From Podarcis muralis (Eukaryota), in the NCBI RefSeq assembly GCF_964188315.1, contig NC_135656.1:71300001-71364000 (forward strand): a stretch of DNA of 64,000 bases. Direction: 5' to 3'. Position 1 is the first letter of the stretch. Every line of letters starts with the position of its first letter. This document shows, one piece after another, positions 868 to 50,468 of this stretch. The notes beneath the pieces are model-generated. The model was given only the letters and a program-made list of their open reading frames with translations, had not been told where the DNA came from and did not search any database. The position numbers and the translations under genes were made by a program.

Positions 868-870
<3 letters not shown>

Positions 871-951: not shown

Positions 952-953
<2 letters not shown>

Positions 954-5883: not shown

Positions 5884-6134
5884 TATGTGCATATTAGCTG
5901 TGATGTGTTATGAAGAACTGGACACACAAAGAAACATGAAAATTTAAAGAATAGTACAACATGCCACAGGACTCACAATGTTAGGAATATCATTAAAAGA
6001 TAGAAAAACTAATAATTGGGTACAAGAAAGACTGAAAGTTGGGGTTGTAATGGAAAAGGCCGTGAAGCTAAAGTGGGCAGGCCATGTGGCCGGAGACGAT
6101 TCAGGCCAATGGAATAAAGCAGTGTTAGTATGGT

Positions 6135-6818: not shown

Positions 6819-6985
6819 GATCATCTATGTTATGGTTGGACCATCCAAAACTAACAGCACAGCTTATGTGGATGCAGGAAGCAAACAACAGAAAGTGATG
6901 GAGAGAACTTGAAGAGGGGTATATCCAAAGATCAGTGGAGGTGAGGAACAGGTTTAAGGATTAAAATTCTACAAGGCAGGCTTAA

Positions 6986-8176: not shown

Positions 8177-8489
8177 ATATTCAAAGATGGATGTGAAATG
8201 CTGTAGAAGAAGAAAGAAAGATGGCAGTATCTTTGTCTAGATGCCTGAAAAGTCTAATTCTTGCATTACCTCTGTGCTTCAGTTGTCCCTTGGGATCTGG
8301 ATAACAACTTTCATATAAGGCAGGAGAAAATGCACACTAATGTTGAAGAAAAAATGTGTGATTTGAGCACACAGAAAATGCAATTTTACACAATGTTGAG
8401 GGAGAGACATTTGGTGTACAATGAAGGAGAAACAATATGCAAAGAACTGATCATACAGAAACATCAGAGCAGGGGGAAAAACCGTATGC

Positions 8490-8875
8490 ATGTTTACTCA
8501 GAAGCAAGCCCTACTGTGGTCATTTTCTTCTGGGTAAGCAGGCATAGGATTGGGCATTGTTCACTTATCTTGATACAACAGAAGATGCAGAGCTAGGCAG
8601 AGCCAAAATGGGGAGAATATGACAGGCTGCAAATAGAAAATGCTGTAAATTCTCCAAGTGGTTCTTAAACACTTTATACAGTAGTTAATGAAAACTGCAG
8701 TCAGTAAAACTGTCTCGCATATATTGGGTTTGGTTTGGGACAGAAGATGTTAACTAGTAGTGAGGCTCCCATGTTTAGCCCATTCAGTGATTATAACTAT
8801 AAAGTCATTGCAAAAGAGCCCGCAAAGGACCAAGTCAGCTGCAGTTCTCCAAAAGCCAACATTGCAAACATTGCC
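8490..8875 (-). pseudogene. TAS2R: Decayed, 3'-truncated TAS2R pseudogene (TM1 to about TM4)
   Basis: The minus ORF 8750-8974 ends in AADLVLCGLFCNDFIVIITEWAKHGSLTTS, matching TM1/ICL1 of the intact copies. Plus-strand 8545-8620 (gggcattgttcacttatcttgatacaacagaagatgcagagctaggcag) aligns with the TM3 DNA of copy 1 with indels and stops. Boundaries approximate. Confidence 0.8.
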
Positions 8876-9286
8876 CAAGGAAATACATGGGTTGAACCCT
8901 CTTCTTTTCAGCCACTGGTTCTGGCTGTCCCTTTCATGAACCCCCCCACACACACACACACAAAAGATAAGCACTATTAGTCATAGTGGTTAAGTGTCAT
9001 GCCACGGGGCTGAAGCTCAGCTGTGAGGACATCACCACCCCAGAAATCTCATCCTCACAAGGTGTTTTTGCCTTTGCTGAAAATAGGGATGAGCTTGAAG
9101 CTCCCATGAAATGCAAGGAGGCACTTGGTTATGCTCCTAGGCCCCAGGCAATAATCAGTGGTAGTAGTAGTATAAGCATCGCTTGCGTTAGACGTAACAC
9201 TAGGTTTTTAGAAGATCAGCAACAACAACAAACTACAAGCCTCTGGTTGAGAAGTGCTGAAACCAGGACTGGCTTATACCATAGAG

Positions 9287-9525
9287 CAGGCATTTCCAAC
9301 TCCCAAGAGACTGTGATCTACTCCCAGTACAAAAAAAACTGGCAGTGATCTACCCGTCATTGGAGGGAGGAGGAGCGTGCGTGGGGTGGGCGGGTGAATT
9401 CCCCAGAGTTGTTAAGCTTTTTTTGGAGGGAAATGTCCCCCCCCCCCAATGACTTTTTGTACACGATAAGGATCCCGCGATCTACCAGGATCAGCCGGGG
9501 ATCTATCACTGGTTGGACATCCCTG
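9287..9525. mobile_element. hAT-type MITE with 8-bp TSD CCATAGAG
   Basis: TSD at 9279-9286 and 9526-9533; CAGG...CCTG termini. Confidence 0.88.
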
Positions 9526-9598
9526 CCATAGAGGTTTTTCCTGACTTACCACAGGGACACCCTCATTCCTCAGAACAAGTTCCAGCTGAACTGAGGTA

Positions 9599-9830
9599 CA
9601 GCGGTACCTCAGGTTACATACGCTTCAGGTTACATACGCTTCAGGTTACAGACTCAGCTAACCCAGAAATAGTGCTTCAGGTTAAGAACTTTGCTTCAGG
9701 ATGAGAACAGAAATCGGGCTCCGGCGGCGCGGTGGCAGCAGGAGGCCCCATTAGCTAAAGGTTAAGAACAGTTTCAGGTTAAGTACGGACCTCTGGAACG
9801 AATTAAGTACTTAAACCTGAGGTACCACTG
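9599..9830. mobile_element. Tc1/mariner-type MITE (same family as 5663)
   Basis: TIRs and TA TSD; opposite orientation to the copy at 5663. Confidence 0.88.
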
Positions 9831-10774
9831 TACTTGGTAACAATAAACTTACGAGTTGTAGAGTTGGAAGGGACCCAGAGGGTTGTTTAATCCAACCCCC
9901 TGCAATGCAGGATTGATTGCTGCTTTAATTGATATGTTGTATCTCTCAAATTAGGATAGGTTTTTCTTTCATCAGTATCTTTAAAGACATAAATTTGTTT
10001 GCATCTGTTTACAGAAAGGAAAATGCAAAGATGTGTGCCAGAGATAGCAGAGTGGTAAATATATCCCTTCTGTATTTGCATCCCTGTGATTGCTGGTGAG
10101 GATGAAACAGGCTTGAGACAGTGCCTTTGTTTAGATTTATGAAACTTCTAATTCTTTCATTACCTCTCTGCTTCAGTTGCCCATTGGGATGTAGATAACA
10201 ACAGAACAGAAGGAAATGCAGACAATTCGTTTGACCAATATATACATGTCTATACTTTTGAATAGCTGCTCTTTTTTGTATAAGTGAATATGGAAGGTCA
10301 ATATCCAGTCAAATGGCTCTGAACTAAAGCTCATACATCAGTCATAAGGATAATCCCACTGCCCTGCAGATGAATAGATAGGATTGCTAATTTCTTTCTA
10401 GTCATTCATATTACTTACTCATTCCGACTAGGCATAAACATTGCTAGCAAGGTACTCAAAAGGGCTGTTGAGATGCCTACAGCAACAAATCGTTCATTTG
10501 AAGTTACCCACCAGCTCCTAGTTTTTCTGCTGAAATAGACATCTCAGTAGCCCTTCTGTGTTTTGTGCAGTGCAATTTTGGGGAAGATAGATGTGGAGTT
10601 GGAAGGTTCTCGTGGTGACTTTGCTGCCACTTATTTGGTTGATTCCCAGAGATGCCCAAAGCCTATGCAGAAAGCTGCCCTGTCATCAACATGGCCACTT
10701 TACTGGGGAACTCCGCCCACCCCTAACTGGTAAGGTTCAATAGTTCTGCCTTATTAATTGTAGAGTTGGAATGT

Positions 10775-11600
10775 TTAGTCAGAGTCTTATTTCTTGTTAT
10801 ATGAATCCATTGGTTCAAGTCCTGCCCTCTGGAGCAGGAGGGGGGGGGACTTGCTTCATCTTTCATATGACAGCTGTTGAGATATTTGAAGATGGCTAGC
10901 ATATCACCTCTCAGTCTCCTCTTTTCTAGGCTAAACATACCCAGCTCCCTCAACTGTTCCCAATAAGGCTTTCCGGACCCCTGATCATCTTGGTTGCCCT
11001 CCTCTGCACATGTTCCAGCTTGTCAACATCCTTCTTAAATTGTGCTCAGAACTGGAAACAATACTTCAGGTGTGATCTGACCAAGTCATAATAGAGCAGT
11101 AGTCTTGACTTCCCTTGATCTGGACACCATACTTCTGCTGATGCAGCCTAGAAGAGCATTAGCTTTTTTTGCTGCTACATCACACTCTTGACTCATGTTA
11201 CACTTGTGGTCTACTAAGACCCCTGGATCCTTTTCACATGTACTACTGGCAAGCCAAGTGTTCCTCATCTTATATTTGTGCAGCTGGTATTCCTGCCTAA
11301 TTGCAGAACCTTATATTTGTCCCTACTGAAATTCATTGTGTTAGTTTGAGCCCAGTTCTTCAATGAGGTAAGGTCATACTGAATCCCAATTTTGCCTTTT
11401 GTGGCATTAGCTATCCCTCCCAGCTTGGTGTCACCTGTAAATTTGATGAGCATCCCTTCAATTCCTTCATCCAGATCTTTTATACATTGAACAACAGCGG
11501 ACCTAGGACAGAACCCTGTGGCACCCCACTGCTCACTTCTTTTTGGGATGATGAGGAACCATTAGTGAGAATTCTGGGTTCAGTCAGTCAACCAGCTACA
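10775..11600 (-). mobile_element. CR1 LINE 3' fragment
   Basis: LIKF..DTKLGG, TCEKDPGVLVDHK and [18 protein letters not shown]. Confidence 0.92.
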
Positions 11601-11622
11601 AAGGCCTGAGACCTGTGGGTAT

Positions 11623-11969
11623 AGGTAAAGGTAAAGGGGACCCCTGACCATTAGGTCCCGTCGTGACCGACTCTGGGGTTGCAGCGCTCATCTCGTTTTA
11701 TTGGCCGAGGGAGCCGGCGTACAGCTTCCGGGTCATGTGGCCAGCATGACTAAGCCGCTTCTGGCAAACCAGAGCAGCGCATGGAAACGCCGTTTACCTT
11801 CCCACCGGAGCGGTACCTATTTATCTACTTGCACTTTGATGTGCTTTCGAACTGCTAGGTTGGCAGGAGCAGGGACCGAGCAACGGGAGCTCACCCTGTC
11901 GCGGGGATTCGATCCACCAACCTTCTGATCAGCAAGTCCTAGGCTCTGTGGTTTAACCCACAGCGCCAC
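11623..11969 (-). mobile_element. Sauria SINE, full length
   Basis: Reverse complement of the copy at 4098, including the tail. Confidence 0.9.
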
Positions 11970-12894
11970 TAGGGTGGTATATAAATCCAATAAATGAAAT
12001 AAAAATCAACCCAACAGTTACCTTGTCCAGCCTACATTTTACTGCTTCTATACAGGAAATAATAACCAATAATAGCATCATTGATGCAACTCATCAATGC
12101 AGTTATCTATGCTAAATATGGAGATGTGTGATAGTAATGTGTTTGGGTTTGATTCAGCTGTTTTTCAGAAGCAGGGCTAATTTGCACCGTTTACCTTGGA
12201 AAAAATGTTGGGTGATATTTCAGAGTACATTTGGTTTGTCAGGAGACAGATCAACCCTAATGGTAGACACACTGCTATGATTAGTAATAGATGATCATTT
12301 CTTTCCATGTCTGTTGTGATAACTGTCTTCGTATGCAGGGAAAGTCCCTAACTCACTGAGGGTTTGAGACCCATCGACTTCCCTCACCTGGTTTAGCCAA
12401 CTATTCGAAGCCATTACCAGGGTGTGGCCACAGTTGCATGCTGACAGCTTCCCGAAGCCACAAGTGAGAGCTGAGTGCAGGGTGGGGCCCAAACATGGAC
12501 AAACTACACTAGAAGGAGCACAATGTATTCCCCATCAGAGGTACTACCCCTTCCAGAAACTCCTGAAGCCAAGCTGGTGCCAAACGTATTGCTCTGCATT
12601 CCTTTAGACTACATCAGCAAGGCTGAGAGAGGGTCTTGTTGTCTGGGCAGCCCAGGACCTCCCTACACAATGCTCAGGCTTGCACTTTGGTGCTGCTAAC
12701 ACAATGGTTTGTCTTCACCTCAGAGGCATACTCCATTGCCTCTTGGCACTGACAGAATGCCAACAACAATGTCATACCTGACAACACAGATACAGATAAT
12801 GAAAGGTCAGCTTCTATATCTAACTTGTATGACAGGAGATGCAAAATGGCCAGGTATGTTAGGGTTGTACCGCTTAGGAACATTTAATAGTAGG

Positions 12895-13251
12895 CAAAGT
12901 GGTCTAAACCACTGAGCCTCTTGGGCTTGCCGTTCAGAAGGTCGGGGGTTCGAATCCCCGCGACGGGGTGAGCTCCCTTTGCTCAGTCCCTGCTCCTGCC
13001 AACCTAGCAGTTCGAAAGCACGTCAAAGTGCAAGTAGATTAATAGGTACCACTCCGGCGGAAAGGTAAACGGCGTTTCCGTGCGCTGCTCTGGTTTCGCC
13101 AGAAGCGGCTTAGTCATGCTGGCCACATGACCCGGAAAAACTGTCTGCGGACAAACGCCGGCTCCCTTGGCCTATAAAGCAAGATGAGCGCACCAACCAC
13201 AGAGTCATTCATAACTAGACTTAACTGTCAGGGGTCCCTTTACCTTTACCT
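12895..13251 (+). mobile_element. Sauria SINE
   Basis: Same body and tail as the copy at 4098. Confidence 0.9.
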
Positions 13252-13719
13252 AAAGGGAAATTAAGCAAAAGCTTCTGTACTTGAGTAAGGATTAATTTAG
13301 AGAAGGAAGGGAAGAGTCAAGGAAAACATTCAAAGTTATGTTCTCATGTGGTATCTGTGTAATGAAGCAAATAGGTTTTGGTCATCGATATAGAATATAA
13401 CAGACAAAAATGACACTGCGACAATTTAGATTTTAGAATCCATTATATTTATACTAACTTGTACAAATGAGTCCATGGTCTTAATGCCATGTATCATTGT
13501 AGCTGCGAGATTGTGTTATGCAGAATAGGTAGGGAAAGGTTTGTGGCAAAGTGGGCGACATAAACGTAGGAATATGCTGTAATAGGAAGCTTAGGCATTG
13601 CATAAGGGTGAAAGGAGGAGGCAAAAAATTAACAGATTTGTTCAGCATTGGAAAACGTTTCTTGATTAGTAGTCAAAAAACCCCCCCACACCTTCTAGTT
13701 TTTCCTTGTGAATTTAAGG

Positions 13720-14619
13720 CTATGTTTTTGGAAGCATCTGCATAGCTGCCTGCTTGAGCTTGGGATTAGCCAACAGCAGGATGGCACCCTGTGCAGGGGA
13801 GTACATTAGGATCACTGTTAGACACACCGAATAAACAGAGGTGATTCTTTCAATATTTTGAAGTACAATTATGGAATGTGCCACGTAAAAAAAAATGTAA
13901 ACGATCAGGAGGGAGAGCACTGTCCCAGCTGCCCTGATATGAGCTTTTGTTTGGAGGCTTGGAAGACTGGCTCCTTTACCTGTCATCTTGCAGACATGTG
14001 TGTAGAGTGAGGCTACAATCACAATGGAGCACAATAAAACCACAAGAAGGGGACAGCCAGAAGCAGTCATTAAAAAAAAGGCTTGCAGAGAACGAGAAAG
14101 TTGGGTTGCTTTCTTTCCTTGAGTCACATTTGAAGTGTTGGTTGCTATGTTGCTCTGGAGCTGAAAAGAAATATGTGGGATTGTAATCAAAGAAACAAAA
14201 ACCGAAAAGACTTGGGATCCCACAAGAAGCCAGGGCAGCAGCTGCGATATCCTCAGCTTGCACCAAAGGAAGAGGGTGTGGGTGCTGTTCACTATCTTGA
14301 TGCAATAGAAGACGCAGAGCCAGGCAGTGAAACAAAATCGGGTGTATGAGACAAAGGTTGCAAAGAAGTAGAATGTTTGAAACACTAAGCCGTCGCTTGA
14401 GTTGGTTATTAAGAAATTAGTAATGACTGCAATCTCACAGGCAGTGGCAAAGATATTGGACGTACCCAGAGAGAGAAGTAGTTGTTCACAAGTTGCAAGA
14501 CTCTTGCATTGAGCCCATTCAGTGACCATCACTGCAACTATAAAACCGTTGGAGATGAGCCCACCTAGAACCCAGTCACTTGCAGCCACCAGAAATGCAA
14601 TGATTTTGGAAGAAGGCAT
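13720..14619 (-). CDS. TAS2R: Intronless bitter taste receptor (TAS2R family), copy 2, 299 aa
   Basis: Intact ORF with the same motif set (GLISNGF, AWLCVFYCIKI, FLWCKLRI, SLYTH, HIRA, NPKLKQAA). Confidence 0.93.
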   Translation of the reverse strand: MPSSKIIAFLVAASDWVLGGLISNGFIVAVMVTEWAQCKSLATCEQLLLSLGTSNIFATACEIAVITNFLITNSSDGLVFQTFYFFATFVSYTRFCFTAWLCVFYCIKIVNSTHTLFLWCKLRISQLLPWLLVGSQVFSVFVSLITIPHISFQLQSNIATNTSNVTQGKKATQLSRSLQAFFLMTASGCPLLVVLLCSIVIVASLYTHVCKMTGKGASLPSLQTKAHIRAAGTVLSLLIVYIFFYVAHSIIVLQNIERITSVYSVCLTVILMYSPAQGAILLLANPKLKQAAMQMLPKT

Positions 14620-14715
14620 ATTTCCAGACCCTTGCAGACTGCTGTACAGGTGGACTGACCAAAGTTCTTGAGTTCATGCAGCGCACAGGTGTGATGGTAG
14701 CAGATCAGCAGCATA

Positions 14716-14769
14716 CTTTTTAATCCATTGGGAACTATGCAAATGAACTGAGCATCAAACTATGTAAAT
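14716..14769 (-). promoter_or_regulatory. TAS2R copy 2 proximal promoter: octamer pair + TATA-like box
   Basis: ATGCAAAT at 14737-14744 and ATGTAAAT at 14762-14769, with a TATA-like element just below. Confidence 0.65.
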
Positions 14770-15826
14770 CAATGTGCTACCAAGTTCCACAAGGCTCTTA
14801 TTTGGGAGAGTGGTGTTGATACAGACTGTATAGAAGGGCTTCCTGTCACACAACCTTTTGTGAATCAGGGATGTTGCTCCATTTTGGGAGTTATATGAAT
14901 AAGAAAGCTTGCCACTGGCAGCCACTGCAGTGGCCCAGATTTTTCTCTGCAGGAAAAAAGTGTTAGGAGTTGGGGAAATGGCCCTTGAAGCAAGGAAGGA
15001 ACATCAAGAAATGGCGTTGGAAGATACTCGTCGTCTTGCTTACACTCAGACCCTCTTAGTTTTGGTTTTCATGACTTTTTAGCCTATTATCCCACTTCAT
15101 AAAAACTATTATTTCCACCACAGGAAGCTATCTCATGCCCCAAGCTTAAAAACTTCATAAAGTCTTCACCGGTACAGTTTACTATTTTTTGGTGGCTGCT
15201 TATTTCTCTGACCCCAATCCAGCTGTTGACATCAATCTGTCATTTTTTTTTCTTTATGAACAGATACACAATTGAATGACGCAGTATCAAACTTCAGCAA
15301 GTGACAGCAATGGAGTTAGCTCAGAGATCATTTTTCCAGTGCACATGCTGCAATTGCTGCTCTGCTTAAATCAGCTCCAGCTCTCCACTGACACACAGTA
15401 TACTCAAAATGTAGAGCCAGTTTTTAATACTGTCAAATGCTTCTGTTTCTTCTATTTAGTGTAGCCAAAAGACTTCATTGCCTGTGCCATTCAAAGTAAT
15501 GTTTTTGATTGTGCTCAAGGGTGTTGTTGCCATGCTAAACCTCTGAACTTTTTAAGTATATATTTGCATTAAGGGACATAAACAGCCCAAGCTATACATC
15601 CTTGAAATTTAATCATACTATATTCAATGGGCTTACTCTATGTACAGTGTGCATATGATTACAGCCTTAAATGATAGGTTTATCTGTCAAATAATTATAG
15701 GTTTCTGTTTCCTTAGTGTATTAAAAGCACACAGATTTGTTCATTGCTGTTTTCCAGGATGGAAAAAGATTTAGTGTCTTTTACTAAGTCTAGTGGTAAC
15801 TATTTCTCTTTTCTTGCATCATTATA

Positions 15827-16068
15827 CAGTGGTACCTTGGGTTACAGACGCTTCAGGTTACAGACGCTTCAGGTTACAGACTCCGCTAACCCAGAAATAG
15901 TACCTCGGGTTAAGAACTTTGCTTCAGGATAAGAACAGAAATTGTGCAGCAGCATCACGGAGGCAGCAGGAGGCCCCATTAGCTAAAGTGGTACCTCAGG
16001 TTAAGAACAGTTTCAGGTTAAGAATGGACCTCCAGAACGAATTAAGTTCTTCACCCGAGGTACCACTG
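15827..16068. mobile_element. Tc1/mariner-type MITE (same family as 5663)
   Basis: TIRs and TA TSD. Confidence 0.88.
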
Positions 16069-16756
16069 TAATTGCAGCTGAGGATCAAATAGGCATAGGA
16101 CAGAATCTTTTATTAGAGTCATGAAACATCTAATTCTTGCATTGCTTCTTTGCTTCATTTGCCCCTTGGGGTGTGGATAACAACCTACCTAAAGGGTGGG
16201 CGGGGGAGCAAAAAATGCAAACTAGCATGTAATAAATGTGTTGTGCTTAGAACACACGGGAAATGCAATAGCGCCATGTTGTCGTGAGACCTTGTTGTAC
16301 ATAAATCAAACTATTCAAAGTAGATAAGAGCACAGTATGATCAGAAATGTCTGACTCCAATAAATAACAACCAACCACATGTTCCTACAAGTCAACAGAG
16401 AGCACATAAAAGTGATAGCCTACCCATTCTTTCCACCTGCAGCATGCTGAGTCTGTTTCTTTCCACGTGAAGGCTCCATTTAGCTATTCGGATGAATAGC
16501 CATTGATAGACCTGTCCTTCATGGTGCATCTAATCCTCTCCTAAGATCCAGGGGGGACAGCAGGTGGCTTTGAGGATGGAGCAGGTCATGGCAAGACTTC
16601 AGAGGGAGATGAGGCTGTGATGGAGACAGGTCTTAGTGTCCTTACAAAGAAGGAGATGGGACTGAAGGGAGTACATAGAAGCTATATATGAGAGTCTTTG
16701 CTCATCATAATCCACAGGAACTTCTAAAATATAATTTTGTGTTGTTCCCTTTGCAG

Positions 16757-17054
16757 GCTGTTGTGGTACCCAGAAGAGAATCATGCTGTAAGTGGAATGG
16801 AGGCTGAAGCAGATGTCTTTATGAACAGTGCACAATGGATTATGCATTACCTTTCTAAGGAAGCAGACCCTGAAAGTCAGCAGCCAGCTGAGAAAGAAAG
16901 GATCTCAAATATTAAAAAGCAGCCAGCCTGTGGAGATACACACCATGCCACAAGAAGATTGCCAGATAGAATAGATCAGGGTTCAGTAAACTTTTTCAGC
17001 AGGGGGCCGGTCCACTGTCCATCAGACCTTGTGGGGGGCCAGACTATATTTTGA
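16757..17054 (+). CDS. APEH: APEH-like terminal exon (catalytic His region), with the reading frame running on past the expected stop
   Basis: Pyrimidine tract plus acceptor ttccctttgcAG (16755-16756), then phase-2 (R)LLWYPEENHAVSGMEAEADVFMNSAQWIMHYL. This matches the human APEH C-terminus RLLLYPKSTHALSEVEVESDSFMNAVLWLRTHL (recalled), including the catalytic His. No other APEH exon was found in the window, so functional versus relic status is unresolved. Confidence 0.75.
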
Positions 17055-17234
17055 AGAAAAAAGAGAGGGAAAAAATGAATTCCTATGCCCCACAAATAAC
17101 CCAGAGATGCATTTTAAATAAAAGCACACATTCTACTCATGTAAAAACATGCTGATTCCCAGACCGTTTGCGGACCGGATTTAGAAGACGATTGGGCCGG
17201 ATCCGGGCCCCGGGCCTTAGTTTGCCTACCCGTG
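16977..17234. mobile_element. hAT-type MITE with 8-bp TSD GAATAGAT
   Basis: TSD at 16969-16976 and 17235-17242. A truncated copy of its left end lies at 59820-59894. Confidence 0.9.
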
Positions 17235-18758
17235 GAATAGATCTAGCCTTTGTATCCCTGACAGGAATCCCTTTCCTCTTTCAGTGTATTCTTAAAAGAT
17301 ATGCTGCTGGTGCCTTGGAAACAGCCTTGTACAGATTCAAACCTTTGACCCCTGCAACCTAGTAATGTCTATGTTGACAGAGAGCAACTGTCAGAATGTC
17401 AGATTGCGGACGTTTCCAGCCCTTTCTGAAGATGCTGATGATTCAGGCTGGGACCCTATGCATGGGCAGATGTTCTACCACTGTGCTACAATGCAGGTCC
17501 TTTTCAGAAAATCTGCAGCAAACAGTCAACTGTCTAATTGAACTTAACTCTCGTAGCAAAGCTGACGTCTTAAGAATTTGTATTGCTGCTTATAACTACA
17601 AGGCAGTGTGGATAGTTCTTTCTTATTTATTTATAGGACACCAGATCTTGGAATAATAGGTACTAAAATAAAAAAAAACTCAACCTTCTTGTTTTTATTG
17701 TTATATGTACTAAGCTATACATAACCAAACTGGTCCCTGAGGGAATTAAATGTCTTATAAGATTATAGCTTCAAGACTGTGGTATGCAAAATATGTGGGA
17801 AACACTGATATACCAACAACAACTATGTCACAGTGAGAACCCTAAATGTAGGAATATACAGCAATGGCAAAGCTTATGAGTTTTATAAGGATGAAAGAAG
17901 GAGGGGCAAAAATTAACAGGTTTTCCCCCCAAGATTGGAAAATGTTTGTTAATTATTGGCATAATAAAGCAAATACTTCAGGAGATAACACTTTTATTTG
18001 ACATGCTGTAACAAGAAAAAAGAACAACAAATAGGTTTAAAAGCTAACACATTTATGCATGTAATGTTATCCTGAGTGGCAAGTACATATATAAATATTT
18101 TGGGTGTGGAGATTGTAAAAAGTGAGGTCAGATGGAAATGAAATGTGCAAAACCTCCAACTGTGAGAATTACTTATTTAGCAGGTGTAGTTCACAAAACA
18201 GTTTTTGATGTCACAGATATTGTTGCTTTGGTAAGTAAATACAACGTGCTAAGAATTTTCTTTCGCTGTTCCATCAACAAATATAGCAGTGAAAACTCTT
18301 GATGTGTATTGTAATTTAGTGGTTTCACATTGCAGTGTCCCTATGAAGCTCCTTTGCTACAGGGTGACTAGTCAAAATTTATTTACACAGTGTACTGGAC
18401 AGTTAAAATGCATACTGTATTGACATTTCTGATGTCCAATTTTTGTCCATTTCTTATTTTGCATAGAGACTGCCCTGTGTAAAATGCAGAAGGGCATAAC
18501 TGGCAGATGGCATATATCACATGAAGAGGGGAATCAATCCCTTATGTTGCTGATGGCATTATCAGGCCCAGGAAAGGTATTACACTCTAGTTTGGCCCTA
18601 AGAATTTTCTTAAATAATCCTTGTTATTGGTATTTTTCAGCACAGGAATAAGAAACCTGTGTGCCTAACAGAACGGCACGGGGGGGGGGGGGGGAACCAA
18701 ACCAATAACTTAAACACAGTGCTCTCTGTTTGGCCAGTGTCAATGTCCTTAAGAATTG

Positions 18759-19545
18759 TTAAGTCTCTGTTTTTGGAAACATCCTGGCAGCTGCCTGCTT
18801 GAGTTTGGGATTAACCAACATACCTGGGTGTTTTTTTTACCCTGTCCAATTGTAAGCAAGGTCTCTGTCAGGCAAAAAGAGATAGCATCAGGAGGGAGAG
18901 CACTTTTCCAGCTGCCTTGATGTGAGCTACCATTTGGGGACTCTGAAAATTCAATCCTTTACCTCTCATCTTGCAGAAATGTCTAAAGCGTGAGGCTACA
19001 GCCATGATGGAGCAAAGGAAAGCCGCAAGAAAGGGACAGCCAGAACCAGTATGGGTGGGAAAGGCCTGAAAAATTCAGTCTGTCTTTCCTTGCGTCACAT
19101 TTGTTACATTGTCTGGTATTTTGCTGTGGATTATTTTATAAATATTCTGCACTGCAAACAGGGGGGGGGGGGGACGGGGGACAGTGAGATGAGATCCCAC
19201 AAGAAGCCTGATATCCTCAGCTTGCACCAAAGGAAGAGGGAATGGGTGCTGTTCACTATCTTGATGCAATATAAGATGCAGAGCCAGGCTGCGAGCCAGA
19301 ATTGAGAGAATGTGACAAAGGTTTTAAAAACAGAGCATTTGCGGTATTAAGTACTACCTAGTGAAAAATGGAACCATAAAACCTGTATAGCAGACATTGG
19401 ACATACCCAATGCCGTAGTTGTTCGCTGACGGCAAGGTTCCTGCATTCAACCCATTCAGTGATGATCACTGCAACTATAAAGCCATTGGAGAAGGCCAAG
19501 TCCATTACATCCACCAGAAATGCAATAATCTGGGGGAGAAGGCAT
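18759..19545 (-). pseudogene. TAS2R: TAS2R pseudogene, copy 3
   Basis: Aligns end to end with copies 2/4/5 but is 787 nt. It has a +1 C after codon 4, a 12-nt loss in TM1, a frameshift at the TM2 start, a poly-G/C tract at about 19160, and a deletion of about 57 nt in TM7. Confidence 0.9.
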
Positions 19546-19648
19546 ATCTCTGGATTCTTGCAGACTGCTAGACTTTCACTAGCATTGAGATGGGGAGTCC
19601 AAGTGAGATAGCAGGTCTATAGTATACTTTCTCAATGGGTTGGGAACT

Positions 19649-19681
19649 ATGCAAATGAACTATGCATCAAACTATGTAAAT
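19649..19681 (-). promoter_or_regulatory. TAS2R pseudogene copy 3 retained octamer pair
   Basis: ATGCAAAT at 19649-19656 and ATGTAAAT at 19674-19681. Confidence 0.55.
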
Positions 19682-20309
19682 TCATGGGACTCTTGGCCTT
19701 CCCATTTCCATGATGCTTCTACACAGTATAGTGGTGTTGATGACAAACTATATTGAATGGCTTTGTATAAATTGAATTGGTGCTTCATCTTGGTGGTTAT
19801 ATGGAACAAGAAATTTTGCCCAAGAGAACCCTGTTGGTGGTCTAGATTTTACTGCTCAGGTAAAGCATAGGAGGAACTGGAAATACTGCTGTTGAAACAT
19901 GGAAGGACCACCCCTGGTGGTTACAATATGGGGTATCATAGGGCACTATTCTATCCCCATTGCTGGGAGCAGCCATTAGGACTTTGGGGGCCAGGTGCGA
20001 TTTGTATGCTGATCCTCAGCTCTCTTTCTCCAGAAGTTCTGAATCAGGAGAAGCCATGTGGGCCCTGGGCTGATTCCTTGATACAGACTTGGGATGGATG
20101 AGGGGGAATAAGCTTGTTTGTATCCTGGCAAGATGGCTTTGATCTGTGGAACTGTCATGGTTACAGATGCCACATAATATCTGTTCAGTAGCTGTAAGAA
20201 ATTGATCTTTTAATGTGGTAGCACCTAAACTGGAACTCCCTGCCTATTGATATCAGACATATGCCTTTGCTGTGCTCTTTCTGGTGCCTGTGCAGACATA
20301 CAGAAGTTA

Positions 20310-20495
20310 CAGTCGTACTTCCGTTTACGTAACCCTCTGGTTACGTAAACTTTGGGATCGCGCGCGGCAAACCTGGAAGTATTTTACTGGATTTCACTGC
20401 GTGTGCATGCGCAGAAGTGGTCCTCAGGTTGCAGAAACCTCGGGATCCAACTGGACCTCCGAAACAGATCCCGCCTGCAACCGGTGGTACCACTG
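20310..20495. mobile_element. Tc1/mariner-type MITE
   Basis: TA-CAGTCGTAC...GGTACCACTG-TA. Confidence 0.8.
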
Positions 20496-20562
20496 TACAT
20501 GTGTTTTTCTCTTTTTAGCTACTGTTGATTTTAATTATATTCTGACTGATTTTAAATACATA

Positions 20563-20811
20563 CAGTCATACCTTGGTTGTCAAATGGAATCTGTTCTGGA
20601 AGTCCGTTCGACTTCCAAAAACGTTAGACAATCAAGGCGCGGCTTCCGATTGGCGGCAGGAGCTTCCAGCACTCAATCGGAAGCTGCAGAAGCCGCGTCG
20701 GATGTTCAGGTTCCAAAGGACGTTTGCAAACCGGAAGTCACTTCCGGGTTTGTGGCGTTCCGGAGCCAAAACATTTGACTCCCAAGGAGTTCCAGAACCA
20801 AGGTATGACTG
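20563..20811. mobile_element. Tc1/mariner-type MITE (CAGTCATACC subfamily)
   Basis: TA-CAGTCATACCTTGG...CCAAGGTATGACTG-TA. Related copies at 37595-37844 and 63778-63996. Confidence 0.88.
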
Positions 20812-22130
20812 TACTTGTTCTTAAACTTTATATTGAGAATTTTATTGTTTATATTTTTGTAACCAGTTAGAAGGATTGTGGGTTTTTTTTACAGTCAAGG
20901 GCACATAAATTTTGTTAAATAAAATAAACAGTAACTCCATCTCTCCACTGACCCACAGTCTATTCATAACACAGAAAAAGCTGTAATACTGCAAAATGCT
21001 TTAGTTTCTTCTGTTAGTTTAGCCAAAAGACCTCATTGCCCGTGTTATTCAAAGTAACATTTTTCACTTTGCTCAAGATAGTTGTTAATTTCTGAAGTAT
21101 GCTTTTAAATTAAGGGACACAGACAGCCCAATCCTATGCAACCATGGAATTTAATCCTACTGTATTTAGTGGACTTACTCTAAAGTAAGCGTGCACAGAT
21201 TGTAGCCCTAATTGATTAGTTTACCTGTCAAACATGATAGGTTTGGGTTTCTTCAGTGTCTTAAAAAGCATAGAGATTTGCTTGGTGCTGTTTTCCATAA
21301 TAGAAAATGGAAATATATGTATTTTATTAAGCAAAGCAGTAACTAATTCCATTCTATATTTGCATCGCTGTATTTGCAACTGAGGATCAAATAGGCAAAG
21401 GACAGTACTTTTTATTAGATTTCTGAAACAGCTGGTTCTTGCACTGCCTCTGTGCTTCTGTTGGCCCATGAGATGTGCATAACAATCTTCATAAAGGGCA
21501 GGGAGAGAGAGAGAAATCAAACTAATGTGTAAGAAATATGTTGTGTTCTGAGCATGCAAGAACTGCAATCACACAAAATGTTGAGGGGAGACATTTGATG
21601 CACAAAAAAGAGCCACAAAAGCTTCTGGTAGTTGGTGTTTAACAACATCTGCAGGTAGTGGATGGTGGGGTAGCTTTCCAGGCATCCAAATTGCCTAGCA
21701 AAGTTTGAAATTCTTGTGGTTGATGAAAAAGGAAATTATAAAGGTCTAGCCTTCCTATATACATGCAATATTCTACTGTTGGTCATCTGTCCCAGATGAG
21801 GGCATCATGGAGAAGGGGACCAGTTGCCAAGGGGAAGTGGGAAGAAATCGGAGAACTCCAGGAAGGGAGAAGCTAAATCCATTTCATAGGACACTCTGGA
21901 TATAGGGAGGGGAAAGTGTGGGACAGAAGTAGATGGAGAAGAAGAAAAGGGGGAATTGAAGGAGGTACAATAGGGCTTCACGATCCACATTAAGCCAGTG
22001 TATGGATGGAGTGCCTATTGAACTTAATCTTGCTGGCAAGGTTGACGAATATGAATTTGCATTGCAACTTACGATTTCTGCCATTATCTTCAGCCAAAAC
22101 AGATTAAATAGTGCTTGCTTGATCACTTGC

Positions 22131-22131
22131 T

Positions 22132-22187
<56 letters not shown>
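22131..22187. repeat. (TTTC)n microsatellite
   Basis: Seen directly. Confidence 0.95.
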
Positions 22188-22634
22188 TTTCTTTACAGGG
22201 TACCTGATTTTGGTATAACAAGTTCTAAAGTCAAAATCTGACCTTTGTCATATTACCCTTGTTATATTTTATTAACCTATAAACACACACACACATGGTC
22301 CAAGTATAACAGAGGGAATTTAAATTTTATGTGAGTAAAGTTTCAAGACTGGTATGCAAAATGTTTGGAAAAGGCAAGAACCATGACATAGTGAGAATTC
22401 AAAACGCAGGACTATGCAGTAATGGCAAAACTTATGAGTTTATACAAATGAAACAAGGGAGGCAAAAAGTAAGAGGCTTATTATTCAAGATAAGCAATTG
22501 CTAATGGATTGTTGGCATAATAAAGCACATCAGTAAATAATAAGACTTTTATTTGACATGCTGTAACAAACAAGAACAGTGAAAAGTCGTAAGGCAGAAA
22601 ATAACAATAGTAATAGTAGTAGTAATAATTAATA

Positions 22635-22745
22635 ATAATTTATACCCCCGCCCATCTGGCTGGGTTTTCCCAGCCACTCTGGGCAGCTTCCAACAAAACC
22701 TTAAGATACAATAATTCATAAAATATTAAAAACTTCCCTAAACAT
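22635..22745 (-). mobile_element. L2-type 3' tail
   Basis: tttatacccc...cccagccactctgggc...aaaaacttccctaaaca. The same family occurs at about 47300-47520. Confidence 0.65.
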
Positions 22746-23842
22746 TTTCCCCTATAGAAAAAATGTATGTACAATTATTCTGAGCTGCAAGGGTGTGTTG
22801 GTGTGGTGACTGTAAAAAGTAAGATCAGAGGACATGAAATGTGTAAAACTTTGGACAGTGATAATTACATGGTTAACAGTGGTAATTTCCAAAACAATTT
22901 TTTATGAAGCAGATATCATGGCACCGTTAAGTACAAGGAATGGACAAGGAATTATTTCACTCAGTTCACTCCACAAATGATAGCACTGAAACTCTTGATA
23001 TATTGTGATTCAATGGTTTCATGTCGCAGTGTCCCTTTGAAGTTCCTTTGCTGTAGGATGGCAACTTTAAGGTTATTTACAGAGTGTCATAAAAGCATTC
23101 TGCCAAAGGCTTTTTGAATATTGCCATCTCTGATGCCAGACTTCTGTCCATTTCTTATTTTGCATATAGGCTGGTGTGTTTGTCCTGTGTAGAATGCAGA
23201 AAGGAGTTTCTGATGGCGGATATCACGTAAGAAGATTGCAGATATCACATTGGAAGATGAGGAGGTGAACAAACTCCTGATGTTGTGAACAGCATTCTAA
23301 GGCTGTGTAATAGTATTGCCAGAGTGAATTTGTGGACAGAGATGGCATCTGCGTCTGCCACAGGGGCTGCTCCCTGGTATACAGATCCCTGGCATAGGTA
23401 TGTTGTTTCTTGGGAAGAGCTGTTCAAGAGCAGGAGGTGCCTGTAAACATCACGTTCCTTTGTTTTTGTTTTGCTGCTTTCTAATCCAGGTCTCTCCTAT
23501 GGCAATTCTTAGATGCCTTGACCAATGAGCCTGAAGGGATTTTAATGTTTCATTTTAAGAAAGGAAGTCGCTGACTTAGGGGGAGGAAGCAAGGCTGCTT
23601 GTGACTGGGGCAAGGTGGGGCAGGAGTCTTTAACCACTCATCACCCCCCATCCCAATCAGAACCACAATGGGAGGAAATCTGCTGTTGGCATCAATAGGC
23701 CCTTTCTTCCCATGGCAAATGGCAGGCATGATAGGAGGGGTCAATTCCAGTTTGTGTGCTGGAGAAAACATGCACACTCTACTCCTGACCAGGCTTGGGG
23801 CCCCTGAGCTAGCTCTTCACAAAAGGCAACACCTAAGAATGG

Positions 23843-24739
23843 TTAAGGCTTTCTTCTTGGAAGCATCCTGGCAGCTGCCTGCTTCAGCTTGGGATTCACC
23901 AACACCAGGAGGGCAGCCTGCACAGGGGAGTACATTAGTATCATTGTTATACACACTGAAATGCCAACTATATCTTTGTTAATACAGCCAGTTATAAATA
24001 AGATCTTTGCCACGTAAAAAGAAATGGAAAGCACCAGCAGGAGGAGGACTGTCCCAGCTGCCTTCGTGTGAGCATCTGTTTGAAGGCCCCTAACACTGGA
24101 TTCTTTCCCAGTCAGTTTGTAGACGTGTCTGTAGAGTGAGGCTACAACCATGATTGAGCAAGGAAAAACTATCAGGAATGGGCAGCTAGCACCAGTAATC
24201 AAAAAGAAGATTTTGAAATTAGTAGCAAAATCAACCTCTGTCTGGTCTTGCGTCATGTTTGTAATGCTTCCCTGGGGTTTAATATACACACTCTGCAGTG
24301 CAAAGAAGGAAGCAAGCAAGGAGATGGCTTGAGATCCCCCAAGAAGCCAAGGTATTATCCGTGATATCCTCAGCTTGCACCAAAGAAAAAGGGAGCAGTT
24401 GTTCTTAACAATCTTGAGATAATAGAAGAGGCAGAGCCAGGCAGTAAGCCAGAATCGGGAGAATGTGAGAAAGGTTCCAATGAAGTAGCATGTTTGTAAT
24501 ATTAAGGGGCTGCTAATGTCAGAGATTAAGTAGTACTTAATTAAATATGGAGACAGAACACCCGAGAAGCCGATATTGGACATACCTAGAGACAGAAGAA
24601 GTTGTTCTCTAGCATCAAGTTTCCTGCTTTTAGCCCACTCAGTGACTATCACTGCAACAATAAAGCCATTGGAGATGAGCCCACCAATAGCCAGGACAGC
24701 TAGAGACGCCAGAAAGGCAATAAATTGAGGAGAAGGCAT
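23843..24739 (-). CDS. TAS2R: Intronless bitter taste receptor (TAS2R family), copy 4, 298 aa
   Basis: Intact ORF with GLISNGF, FWLTAWLCLFYYLKI, SLYRH, HTKA and NPKLKQAA. Confidence 0.93.
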   Translation of the reverse strand: MPSPQFIAFLASLAVLAIGGLISNGFIVAVIVTEWAKSRKLDAREQLLLSLGMSNIGFSGVLSPYLIKYYLISDISSPLILQTCYFIGTFLTFSRFWLTAWLCLFYYLKIVKNNCSLFLWCKLRISRIIPWLLGGSQAISLLASFFALQSVYIKPQGSITNMTQDQTEVDFATNFKIFFLITGASCPFLIVFPCSIMVVASLYRHVYKLTGKESSVRGLQTDAHTKAAGTVLLLLVLSISFYVAKILFITGCINKDIVGISVCITMILMYSPVQAALLVLVNPKLKQAAARMLPRRKP

Positions 24740-24863
24740 CTCTCCGTATCCTTGCAGATTACTGTACCAGGTGGCCTTTCACTGATCCAAAGTTGCCCCA
24801 CTGAGATGCAGTGTGCAAGTGAGACAGAACATCTGCAGCATCCTTATGAATGACTGGGGAACT

Positions 24864-24871
24864 ATGCAAAT
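24864..24871 (-). promoter_or_regulatory. TAS2R copy 4 proximal octamer
   Basis: ATGCAAAT in the same GGGAACTATGCAAATGAACT context, 125 bp above the ATG. Confidence 0.65.
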
Positions 24872-26459
24872 GAACTGTGAACCAAATTATAAATTAATGA
24901 GACTCTCCGGCTGCTCATTTCCATAATGCCTCTATCTGGCATAGTGGTGTGGACAGAAACTGTATCAGAGGGCTGCCTGCCACTCCACTTTGTATAAATT
25001 GGGGGGTGGGGGCAGCTTCTCCATTTTGCCAGGCCCGTGAATAAGAAAGCTTGCCACAGGCAACCACTTTGCAGTGGCCCAGAGTTTATGTAAAGAATAG
25101 GAGGAGCTGGAAATTCCAGCTGGCTTGTTTGTCCTCAGACCCTCCTGCTTCTGGTTCCCAGGCCTCTGCAGCCTTTTCTTTTATTTGATCCCATATTATA
25201 GGCAAATGCTTCTTCCTCAACAGCATGCCCCAAAGTAAAATCTATCTGCAGTTATTTCCAATGAAGTTTTCCTTTCCTTTGCTGCTAATTTCTTTAACCG
25301 CAGTACAGTATTTATTCTTTTAAAAACAGATCAATGCAAGCTCCAATTGCAGTGTGTAACAACCACAATAGCAGACTTAGCTCATAGATCCAGCTGCACT
25401 CATTTTTCTATTGCACATTCTGCACTGCTGCACATTCTCCACTCCAGCTCTGGATGAACCCAGTATATTTATAATGTAGAACCTATTTTTAACACTACCC
25501 AGTACTTTTGTTTCTTCTGCCTAGTTTTTCCAAAAGACCTCACTGTGTGTGTGATTCAGTTACCATTTTGACTGCACTGTTGCCATGCCAAATATCTAAA
25601 GTGTTGGATCTTTAAACAGAGGGACATGTCCAGCCCAATCCTACTATATTCAGTGGCCTTTCTCTAAGGTTAGTGCACCTGCGATTGCATTCCTGATTGG
25701 TAGGTTTACTTGCAAATCATGATAGGATTGTGGGTTTTTTAGTGTCTTAAAAAGCACATATTTGCTTGCTGGTCCTGTTTTCCAGAGCTGGAAATGCAAA
25801 GATGTGTATTTAATTTAGCACATTGGTAACTGGATCTGTTTGCCTATTTGATCCTCAGCTGTAATTATAGCAATGCAAATAGCAAAGGACAGCATCTTTT
25901 ATTAGGGTCTGTAAAATGTCTGAGCTGTGGATCTCAACCTTCATAAAGGGCAGAGAGAGGAAGAGAAATGCCCCTTAACACATTAAGAGAAATGTGGTGC
26001 TTTGAGTGATCAAAGTTGGTTCCAGTAATATTTTCAGGCAGGAGCTGACAATATGGCGGGGTAAGACAGCACTGCCTCTCAGGGTCCCTCTAGGTTGCTG
26101 CAAGAGAGGGAAGCAAGATAGCAGAGATCTCAGTGTAGTCCTCCCGGTGGCTTGGGTGCACCAACCTCCTCACCTGAATTGCCTTACTCATCTCTTCTCC
26201 CTCTCAGTAATAAGCCTGGACCTCGGAGTTGGGAAGTGAGGAAAGCAAGACTGCCCAATCCCACCAACAGCTGCTGTCTGCAGGACATTAGGTTACCTCT
26301 GCATTAACCTATTTCACTGTTAACAGGGATGGGGAACCTGTGGCCATTCAGATATTGTTGGATCACAACTCCCATCATCCCTCACTAGGAGGACCAATGG
26401 TCAGGGGTGATGGGAATTGTAGTTCAAAAACAGCTGGAGACCCAGGTTCAGGAAACTCT

Positions 26460-26553
26460 GATCAACCCCCTGCCATGCAGGAATCTTTCACCCAATGAGG
26501 GGCTTGAACCCACGATTCTGAGATTGAGCCTTATGCTCTTCTGACTGAGCTAT
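26460..26553 (-). mobile_element. tRNA-Lys-derived SINE with CR1-like tail (partial)
   Basis: The reverse strand reads tagctcagtcagaagagcataaggctcaatctcagaatcgtgggttcaagcccc. Same family as 32383 and 61968. Confidence 0.7.

Positions 26554-32864: not shown

Positions 32865-50468
<17,604 letters not shown>

What the first reader, a model, noticed from the sequence alone, without database searches (positions are those of the whole stretch)
16757..17054. An APEH terminal exon sits in the middle of the TAS2R array, antisense to the receptors
Seen: a good splice acceptor at 16755-16756, then a phase-2 exon encoding the APEH C-terminus with the catalytic His (ENHAV). Where a stop is expected after HYL(SK), the frame stays open for about 60 more codons and ends inside a hAT MITE. 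An AATAAA follows at 17667-17672. No other APEH exon is visible in the window. Two readings: (a) this is the real last exon, so TAS2R copies 1, 2 and a pseudogene are nested in a >16-kb last APEH intron and APEH has a lineage-specific, TE-terminated C-terminal extension; or (b) the TAS2R duplication unit captured a copy of the APEH 3' end, which could serve as an alternative terminal exon.
Basis: partly seen in the sequence, partly recalled or inferred. Interest (0 to 1): 0.7.

Follow-up and report, generated by a model that had tools for sequence, protein, structure and literature searches.

The report
Last exon of lizard APEH-like gene
This is the working last exon of an already annotated wall-lizard peptidase gene (a sister copy of APEH) whose long final intron has housed bitter-taste receptor genes since early squamates; the only unusual part is a protein tail lengthened by two lost stop codons, which varies between individuals.

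Summary
Positions 16757-17054 (+) are a phase-2 terminal coding exon behind an AG acceptor. It encodes the catalytic His and runs open to a TGA inside a hAT-like MITE.

The 98-aa peptide is 100% identical to the C-terminus of Podarcis muralis RefSeq "acylamino-acid-releasing enzyme-like" (XP_028574488.1/.2). The window matches that assembly with 0 mismatches, so the exon is already annotated.

- **Gene identity:** it is the tandem paralogue of APEH (order APEH, APEH-like, MST1), not APEH itself.
- **Reading (a) is right:** the penultimate exon lies 3.8 kb left of the window. The last intron is 20,569 nt and holds two intact antisense TAS2R genes.
- **Reading (b) is refuted:** the exon sits at the ancestral syntenic position.
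- **Age of the nesting:** TAS2Rs also lie in this intron in a skink, an anguid and four lacertids. Python has none.
- **The extension:** it is 52 aa and needs two stop losses, TAA to GAA at 16896 and TGA to AGA at 16953. Other lacertids keep both stops. Public runs of the same organism carry ancestral, 19-aa and 52-aa alleles.
- **Expression:** RNA reads cover the exon and 3'UTR on the + strand but not the intron.
a decayed duplicate of the catalytic-Ser exon at about 10596-10731.

Overall this is an ordinary, annotated gene with low novelty.

The parts
1..16756 (+). 3' 16.8 kb of the 20,569-nt last intron of the APEH-like gene. The donor lies 3,812 nt left of the window. The AG acceptor is at 16755-16756.
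   Evidence: tblastn of P0159 on L002 and the L002/window offset of 34898 with 0 mismatches.
16757..16895 (+). Conserved coding part of the terminal exon: one base completing a Gln codon, then 46 codons. The catalytic His codon CAT is at 16782-16784. The Peptidase_S9 domain ends at ...HYLSK, and the ancestral tail is EADPESQQPAEK.
   Evidence: dN/dS is 0.13-0.23 against skink, anguid and python.
16896..16898 (+). GAA codon where P. raffonei, L. agilis and Z. vivipara have the TAA stop (first stop-loss, T>G at 16896).
   Evidence: Alignment A3. The run X9 contig carries T here; X1 carries G, and all 5 RNA reads of X23/X24 at this site carry G (table 3).
16953..16955 (+). AGA codon where the other lacertids have an in-frame TGA (second stop-loss, T>A at 16953).
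   Evidence: Alignment A3. Runs X1 and X9 carry T here; the 4 reads of X24 carry A (table 3).
16896..17054 (+). 52-codon read-through extension plus the TGA stop (17052-17054). 27 codons come from former 3'UTR and 25 codons plus the stop come from the MITE.
   Evidence: identical tail in XP_028574488.1/.2 and isoform X1.
16977..17234 (.). hAT-like MITE of 258 bp, with the 8-bp target-site duplication GAATAGAT at 16969-16976 and 17235-17242. A longer 845-bp relative lies at 59820-60664.
   Evidence: The site is empty in L. agilis and filled in P. raffonei and Z. vivipara.
17055..17676 (+). 3'UTR up to the AATAAA (17667-17672) and the A-run.
   Evidence: An X9 contig of 481 nt matches 17202-17676. 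X23/X24 show low coverage at 17301-17700 and none at 17701-17900.
2463..3374 (-). Intact TAS2R (303 aa) nested antisense in the last intron.
   Evidence: Pfam PF05296, E 6e-51. Annotated in L002 at 37361-38272.
13720..14619 (-). Intact TAS2R (299 aa) nested antisense in the last intron.
   Evidence: Pfam PF05296, E 1e-50. Annotated in L002 at 48618-49517.
10596..10731 (+). Degenerate duplicate of the APEH-like catalytic-Ser exon inside the last intron. It has TGA at 10640-10642, TAA at 10724-10726 and frameshifts, and is not part of the gene model.
   Evidence: It is 78.6% identical to the real exon (L002 29940-30078) and is shared with P. raffonei (92%) and L. agilis (84%).
18768..29636 (-). 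TAS2R members downstream of the exon: a pseudogene at 18768-19535, and intact genes at 23843-24739 and 28722-29636.
32863..35171 (-). 3' exons of the MST1-like gene (PAN/Kringle/Trypsin), the conserved downstream neighbour.
   Evidence: tblastx against Python L001 48358-52262 gives 76-84% identity.

Best explanation
Positions 16757-17054 are the functional terminal coding exon of the Podarcis muralis 'acylamino-acid-releasing enzyme-like' gene. This gene is the tandem paralogue of APEH, an S9C serine peptidase, and lies between APEH and MST1.

The exon is spliced to a donor 20.6 kb upstream. It supplies the catalytic His and the last helix of the alpha/beta-hydrolase domain.

The long last intron has hosted antisense TAS2R genes since early squamate evolution. 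In lacertids further TAS2R copies also lie downstream, which is why the exon appears to sit in the middle of the array.

In the reference haplotype two substitutions removed the ancestral TAA stop and a second in-frame TGA. Translation therefore runs 52 codons further, through former 3'UTR, and ends inside a hAT-like MITE that sits in the 3'UTR of P. raffonei and Z. vivipara; L. agilis has the empty site. Alleles with 0, 19 or 52 extra residues occur in public data of the same organism.

Shown: the exon's identity, synteny, intron content, stop-loss substitutions, allelic differences, and strand-specific RNA coverage.

Inferred: that the extension is translated, and that it is selectively near-neutral.
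For: - **Identity:** 100% match of the 98-aa peptide to XP_028574488.1/.2 and isoform X1. The window equals L002 with 0 mismatches over 27,054 nt.
- **Gene model and structure:** the called genes place both TAS2Rs inside the APEH-like range. The donor and acceptor give phase 2 and a 20,569-nt intron.
- **Family:** the full protein has APEH_N and Peptidase_S9 domains, and the Ser/Asp/His triad aligns to 7px8.
- **Synteny:** the window is collinear with Python from the Ser exon through the last exon to MST1.
- **Selection:** dN/dS is 0.13-0.23. The exon region is 96-97% identical among lacertids, against 86-90% for its flanks.
- **RNA:** X23 and X24 have depth of about 2 at 16701-16900 and 0.4-1.4 at 17301-17700, all with the first mate on the minus strand. 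Depth is zero at 16101-16700 and 13301-15700. An X9 contig starts at 16758 and another ends at 17676.
- **Stop-losses:** shown by alignment A3, with allele differences, table 3.
- **Nested TAS2Rs elsewhere:** Tiliqua, Elgaria and four lacertids.
Against: - No junction read joining the upstream donor to 16757 was seen directly. The donor lies outside the window and outside the 6-kb stretch that could be laid. Splice use rests on the RefSeq model, zero intronic coverage and the contig that starts at the acceptor.
- RNA depth is low: about 2x from roughly 12% of each run.
- Translation of the extension is not shown.
- Run organisms are coded, so the three alleles could come from divergent lineages of the species rather than from one population.
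Confidence: 0.93

Rival explanations
1. Captured copy: the TAS2R duplication unit carried a duplicate of the APEH 3' end into the array, where it acts at most as an alternative terminal exon.
For: About 630 nt just upstream of the exon (16122-16750) has a 69-83% paralogue at 26802-27380 between two other TAS2Rs. So intron sequence next to the exon was duplicated within the array.
Against: - The exon is the only copy in the window.
- It lies at the position collinear with Python's last exon and MST1.
- It is the terminal coding exon of the main RefSeq isoforms in four lacertids, though some predicted isoforms end elsewhere.
- The paralogous spacer lacks the exon: homology stops at the acceptor.
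Confidence: 0.02
2. Inert relic: the APEH-like gene is decaying in this lizard, and the exon merely happens to keep an open frame after losing its stop.
For: A degenerate Ser exon with stops and frameshifts lies 6 kb upstream. No exons for residues 624-693 are in the window. The ancestral stop is lost.
Against: - Intact Ser, Asp and other exons lie just left of the window at L002 29930-31085.
- dN/dS is well below 1.
- The exon is more conserved than its flanks.
- There is strand-specific RNA coverage of the exon and 3'UTR with none in the intron.
- The pseudo-exon is an old duplicate shared with Lacerta, not the working exon.
Confidence: 0.03
3. Artefact: the read-through tail is a sequencing or annotation error, and the real protein ends at ...QQPAEK as in other lacertids.
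For: One run (X9) carries TAA at 16896, and another (X1) carries TGA at 16953. All other lacertid models stop at QQPAEK.
Against: - Two RefSeq versions that differ elsewhere in the protein (R/H in EYY[R/H]VL) carry the same tail. They may come from different assemblies or haplotypes, but only P0159 was placed on an assembly here.
- All 5 RNA reads in X23/X24 and the X1 contig show G at 16896.
- The 4 reads of X24 show A at 16953.
Confidence: 0.02

Closest known systems
Podarcis muralis RefSeq gene model 'acylamino-acid-releasing enzyme-like' (XP_028574488.2; isoforms X1-X5 in the earlier release)
   Same: Identical sequence. The model ends at window 17054, uses this exon as its last coding exon and includes the whole MITE-terminated tail. 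TAS2R genes are called inside its range.
   Different: Nothing differs in sequence. The annotation does not say that the tail comes from two stop-losses, that the alleles differ, or that a pseudo-exon lies in the intron.
Mammalian APEH (acylaminoacyl-peptide hydrolase, MEROPS S9C; PDB 7px8)
   Same: Same domain pair (APEH_N plus Peptidase_S9) and the same Ser-Asp-His triad, with the His in the last exon. The C-terminal 185 residues align at E 8e-57.
   Different: This is a separate paralogue, tandem to the lizard's own APEH, which ends ...MLLYPGNNHSLSGVEAEADGFMNIALWLIQHL at L002 6978-7073. It carries an extra conserved tail, EADPESQQPAEK, and here a further 52 residues.
APEH-like orthologues of other squamates (Zootoca, Lacerta, P. 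raffonei, P. lilfordi, Tiliqua, Elgaria, Rhineura, snakes)
   Same: Same last exon (70-100% aa identity) and the same neighbours, APEH upstream and MST1 downstream. Outside snakes, TAS2R genes lie in the last intron.
   Different: All of them stop at or near QQPAEK (lacertids), QQPAEKHMW (skink) or STKVD (snakes). Only P. muralis reads on into the MITE.
Stop-loss (nonstop) variants and TE-derived C-termini; receptor genes nested in host-gene introns
   Same: From general knowledge: a point substitution in a stop codon extends the ORF into the 3'UTR until the next in-frame stop, which here lies in a transposon. Intronless chemoreceptor genes often sit antisense in introns of unrelated genes.
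   Different: Here two successive stops were removed, and an intermediate allele (19-aa extension) is still seen in one public run.

Membership tests
APEH / S9C acylaminoacyl-peptidase family | Peptidase_S9 (alpha/beta-hydrolase) catalytic domain reaching into this exon | tested here: met
   PF00326 matches residues 517-727 of P0159, profile positions 7-212 of 213, E 2e-32. Residues 694-727 are encoded by 16758-16859.
APEH / S9C acylaminoacyl-peptidase family | APEH_N beta-propeller domain | tested here: met
   PF19283 matches residues 57-281 of P0159, E 1.7e-35. These exons lie left of the window.
APEH / S9C acylaminoacyl-peptidase family | Ser-Asp-His triad, with the His supplied by this exon | tested here: met
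   GGSHGG, GAKDRRV and EENHAV align to S587, D675 and H707 of 7px8. The residue numbering of the triad comes from my own knowledge of APEH.
APEH proper (orthologue of human APEH) | Being the single-copy orthologue at the APEH position | tested here: not met
   A separate 728-aa APEH gene lies directly upstream in all seven squamate loci. The window's exon is 56% identical to that gene's last exon, against 100% to APEH-like.
APEH / S9C acylaminoacyl-peptidase family | Enzymatic activity (release of N-acylated amino acids) | not testable with these tools
Intact triad only.
hAT-superfamily MITE | 8-bp target-site duplication and a matching empty site | tested here: met
   GAATAGAT flanks both ends. 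L. agilis has the unfilled site with one copy of GAATAGAT.
hAT-superfamily MITE | Terminal inverted repeats | tested here: inconclusive
   The ends read CAGGGTTCAGTAAACT and the reverse complement CACGGGTAGGCAAACT, which are imperfect. The repeat finder did not report them at seed 7.
hAT-superfamily MITE | Relation to an autonomous element with a hAT transposase | not tested
   Only an 845-bp non-coding relative was seen, at 59820-60664.
TAS2R (the nested genes) | Full-length intronless 7TM ORF matching PF05296 | tested here: met
   Four ORFs of 298-304 aa match at E 8e-46 to 6e-51.

The most novel reading that the evidence does not exclude
Two successive stop-loss substitutions in the APEH-like gene are still segregating in Podarcis muralis. 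They give enzyme alleles with 0, 19 or 52 extra C-terminal residues, the longest ending in transposon sequence. If the tail changes stability, oligomerisation or activity of this S9C peptidase, this would be a natural allelic series caught in the middle of a TE-assisted C-terminal extension.

Separately, the roughly 150-200-My persistence of TAS2R genes inside the last intron of APEH-like could reflect regulatory coupling rather than inertia. That age is my own estimate of squamate divergence times.
Probability: 0.25. Interest if true: 0.4.

Novelty: already known. Interest (0 to 1): 0.2.

Why it matters
Mostly as a correction. The exon is neither a stray nor a captured fragment. It is the annotated end of a working gene, so the TAS2R 'array' here is really a set of receptor genes living in and just beyond a host gene's last intron.

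Three small points go beyond the annotation:
1. The nesting is ancient. It is shared by skink, anguid and lacertids and absent in python.
2. The odd long tail is explained base by base as TAA>GAA and TGA>AGA, and it differs between public samples. It should therefore not be read as a lacertid trait.
3. A decayed duplicate of the catalytic-Ser exon in the intron could mislead gene finders into calling a pseudogene.

Tried and rejected
- **Pfam on the 98-aa peptide alone:** gave only a chance V-ATPase_G_2 hit, E 0.054. The piece is too short, so the match was established through PDB, the representative search and the full-length proteins.
- **Pseudogene reading:** I first read the stop-bearing Ser exon at 10619-10723 as evidence for a pseudogene. 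I rejected this once the intact exons were found just left of the window.
- **Exons for residues 624-693:** sensitive tblastn found none in the window. They lie upstream.
- **A second copy of the exon:** searched in the paralogous spacer at 26802-28700. Homology stops at the acceptor.
- **The look-up of encoding contigs:** found nothing on record for P0002, P0035, P0044 and P0033.
- **Literature:** searches for APEH+Tas2r and Tas2r+Podarcis found nothing relevant.
- **The search of earlier findings:** returned nothing near the site or on APEH.
- **Junction reads:** none could be obtained, because the donor lies outside the window and only one call of at most 6 kb was allowed.
- **Joined model:** I built no spliced model from window exons. 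Stored database proteins were used by id, and window exons were searched one at a time by reference.
- **N run:** the run at 31588-31720 was left untouched.

Full report
**1. What is at the coordinates**

The sequence shows a pyrimidine tract and an AG at 16755-16756. An open frame follows whose translation from 16758 reads LLWYPEENHAVSGMEAEADVFMNSAQWIMHYLSKEADPESQQPAEKERISN...GGQTIF, ending at TGA 17052-17054.

On its own the 98-aa peptide is too short for Pfam, which gave only a chance hit. It does align over residues 1-32 to the last residues (699-730 of 732) of solved APEH 7px8, with its His on H707 (E 0.02).

An exhaustive phmmer search of the representative library gave twelve hits, led by squamate 'acylamino-acid-releasing enzyme-like' proteins:
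- Tiliqua P0002, query 1-47 on residues 719-765, E 6e-10.
- Candoia P0004, E 4e-8.
- tblastn of these proteins back on the window gave E 8e-16 and 2.5e-14.

**2. It is an annotated exon of Podarcis muralis**

A word search with the C-terminal part of the skink protein brought in the lacertid proteins. The P. muralis models XP_028574488.1 (P0035), XP_028574488.2 (P0159) and isoform X1 (P0149) end with exactly the window's 98 residues, transposon-encoded tail included.

The locus of P0159 is L002 (GCA_964188315.1, OZ076955.1:71265103-71327054). It overlaps window 1-27054 with no mismatch at an offset of 34898. The window is therefore OZ076955.1:71,300,001-71,364,000.

The called gene ends at window 17054. 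Two TAS2R genes, at window 2463-3374 and 13720-14619 on the minus strand, are called inside its range.

**3. Gene structure**

Mapping P0159 on L002 gave these exons:

| Exon | L002 position |
|---|---|
| Intact catalytic-Ser exon | 29930-30073 |
| Residues 624-658 | 30339-30443 |
| Penultimate exon (ends ...CCTGTGCA\|GTGAGT) | 30976-31085 |
| Last exon | starts 51655 = window 16757 |

The last intron is 20,569 nt, and its final 16,756 nt are in the window.

The full protein has APEH_N (57-281) and Peptidase_S9 (517-727) domains. GGSHGG, GAKDRRV and EENHAV align to the Ser, Asp and His of 7px8. The S9 domain ends at ...HYLSK, so residues 728-791 are tail.

**4. It is the paralogue, at its ancestral place**

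In Python, P. muralis, P. raffonei, L. agilis, Z. vivipara, Tiliqua and Elgaria, a 727-728-aa APEH gene lies directly upstream of APEH-like on the same strand. A PAN/Kringle/Trypsin gene (MST1-like) was called directly downstream on the opposite strand in Python and Tiliqua, and its 3' exons are in the P. muralis window. The fetched lacertid and Elgaria loci end before it.

tblastx of the Python locus on the window is collinear:
- Ser exon: L001 37359-37463 matches window 10619-10723.
- Last exon plus flanks: L001 43647-43885 matches window 16701-16941.
- MST1 3' exons: L001 48358-52262 match window 32863-35171.

The exon occurs only once in the window. This refutes the reading that it is a copy captured by the TAS2R duplication unit.

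**5. The nested TAS2Rs are old**

| Species | Last intron | TAS2R content |
|---|---|---|
| Python | 4.9 kb | none |
| Elgaria | 7.5 kb | one full-length TAS2R-like match (L007 39658-40539; intactness not checked, not in the called genes) |
| L. agilis | 15.9 kb | T1 and T2 homologues (81% and 91%; intactness not checked) |
| P. muralis | 20.6 kb | two intact |
| P. raffonei | 21.0 kb | two called genes |
| Z. vivipara | 22.0 kb | three full-length matches (two T1-like, one T2-like); only the T2-like one is a called gene |
| Tiliqua | 48 kb | five matches, four called as TAS2R genes |

All the TAS2R matches are on the strand opposite the host gene.

In lacertids further TAS2Rs lie between the last exon and MST1. 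These are a pseudogene at 18768-19535 and intact genes at 23843-24739 and 28722-29636. That is why the exon looks embedded in the array.

The receptors are only 47-57% identical to one another, so these are old duplicates.

**6. The C-terminal extension**

All other lacertid proteins end ...HYLSKEADPESQQPAEK. The skink ends QQPAEKHMW, Elgaria QQPAEQADV and the snakes STKVD. So the 12 residues after HYLSK are the ancestral tail, not part of the novelty.

The DNA alignment A3 shows that P. raffonei, L. agilis and Z. vivipara have GAG AAA TAA, where the window has GAG AAA GAA (T>G at 16896). They also have an in-frame TGA where the window has AGA (T>A at 16953). Both changes are needed for the frame to run on. 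It then ends at the TGA inside the MITE.

The tail is 52 residues:
- 27 from former 3'UTR (ERISNIKKQPACGDTHHATRRLPDRID).
- 25 from the MITE (QGSVNFFSRGPVHCPSDLVGGQTIF).

The MITE spans 16977-17234 and has a perfect 8-bp target-site duplication, GAATAGAT. It is present at the same site in P. raffonei and Z. vivipara, while L. agilis has the empty site. In P. raffonei and Z. vivipara it sits in the 3'UTR.

**7. Allelic variation**

Laying four public runs of the same coded organism on 11901-17900 (table 3) gave three states:

| Run | Base at 16896 | Base at 16953 | Allele |
|---|---|---|---|
| X9 contig | T (TAA) | T | ancestral |
| X1 (even cover of intron and intergenic DNA, so it behaves as DNA) | G | T (TGA) | 19-aa extension |
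| X23/X24 RNA reads | G (5 of 5 reads) | A (4 of 4 X24 reads) | 52-aa extension |

The reference assembly matches the X23/X24 state.

The two RefSeq versions differ elsewhere (EYYRVL against EYYHVL) yet share the long tail. The long allele is therefore not an assembly slip.

The intermediate allele fits a stepwise order: TAA>GAA first, then TGA>AGA. Because run names are coded, I cannot say whether the alleles belong to one population or to divergent lineages.

**8. Expression**

In the two stranded bulk RNA runs (about 12% of each was read):
- Depth is 2.1 and 1.8 in the bin 16701-16900.
- Depth is 0.4-1.4 over 17301-17700.
- All of these reads have the first mate on the minus strand, which means + strand RNA in the usual dUTP design.
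- Depth is zero at 16101-16700, at 13301-15700 (including the nested TAS2R) and at 17701-17900 (table 2).

X9 behaves as RNA, since it covers only the exon, the UTR and repeats. It has a 224-nt contig matching 16758-16981 and a 481-nt contig matching 17202-17676, which ends at the AATAAA and A-run.

A unitig that begins at the acceptor is what is expected when several upstream contexts join the same exon. RefSeq isoform X4 indeed joins another donor to this acceptor in a different frame (...RARGCCGTQKRIML).

No junction read was seen directly. The donor lies outside the window and outside the 6-kb limit.

**9. Constraint**

- For the 34 codons inside the S9 domain, Nei-Gojobori dN/dS is 0.13-0.23 between P. 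muralis and Python, Elgaria or Tiliqua.
- The stretch 16700-16976 is 96.4-97.5% identical among lacertids, against 86-90% for the MITE and the sequence behind it.

The sample is small, but both results point to purifying selection on the exon.

**10.

At about 10596-10731 (+) lies a decayed copy of the catalytic-Ser exon: LCCHLFG*FPEMPKAYAESCPVINMATLLGNSAHP*. It has TGA at 10640-10642, TAA at 10724-10726 and frameshifts on both sides.

- It is 78.6% identical to the real exon, over the exon only.
- It is shared with P. raffonei (92%) and L. agilis (84%) and was not found in Zootoca or Python.
- It keeps the Gly of HLIG(R/Q), as the skink, Rhineura and snake sequences do, where lacertids now have Ala. 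This suggests an old partial duplication.
- It is not in the gene model.

I first took it as a sign of pseudogenisation and dropped that reading when the intact exons turned up upstream.

**11. Verdict**

The finding is correct as an observation, and reading (a) is right in substance. It describes an ordinary, already annotated gene end.

What goes beyond the annotation is modest:
- The base-level origin of the tail and its allelic variation.
- The age of the TAS2R nesting.
- The intronic pseudo-exon.

No relevant paper turned up.

I did not touch the N run at 31588-31720. I built no joined spliced sequence, and used stored proteins by id and exons by reference.

Noticed in passing
window 10596-10731 (+): Degenerate duplicate of the APEH-like catalytic-Ser exon inside the last intron, with TGA at 10640-10642, TAA at 10724-10726 and frameshifts. 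It is shared with P. raffonei and L. agilis and was not found in Zootoca or Python. It keeps an ancestral Gly where lacertid genes now have Ala, which suggests an old partial duplication.
   Followed up: partly
window 16122-16750 vs 26802-27380 (also 21368-21608 and 8225-8384): The intron sequence just upstream of the exon has 69-83% paralogues in other inter-TAS2R spacers. In the 26802 copy, homology runs to the pyrimidine tract and stops at the acceptor. So TAS2R duplication units carried host-intron sequence but not, or no longer, the exon.
   Followed up: partly
window 16788-16789, 16981-16983 and 17284-17285: Alternative P. muralis models splice within or after the exon. One uses the internal GTAAGT donor after ...ENHA. 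RefSeq X3 removes the MITE as an intron (...PDRIDQG|VFLKD...). The donor used by X3 needs G at 16982, which many laid reads carry while the window has T, though some of those reads may come from other MITE copies.
   Followed up: no
window 16977-17234; L004 around 54974: The MITE is present in Podarcis and Zootoca but absent from L. agilis, which has a clean empty site with one copy of GAATAGAT. This could be insertion after Lacerta split off, lineage sorting, or precise loss.
   Followed up: partly
L007 39658-40539 (Elgaria) and L001 (Python): Elgaria has a full-length TAS2R-like match (53% to the window's second receptor) in the last intron of APEH-like that is not in the called genes. Python has none.
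   Followed up: partly
window 15701-16100, 12901-13300 and 11901-12100: Very high-copy repeats. Contig depth sums are 10^4-10^5 times the single-copy level, and RNA reads fall on both strands. They dominate read laying in this region.
   Followed up: no
window 54001-56000: A GC-rich stretch (0.59 against about 0.43 elsewhere). It could be a CpG island or promoter of a gene to the right of MST1. Not examined.
   Followed up: no
window 7334-8035 (+): A LINE reverse-transcriptase fragment (RVT_1, E 1e-10) inside the last intron. Python's APEH-like gene has similar LINE debris at L001 10706-13521.
   Followed up: no
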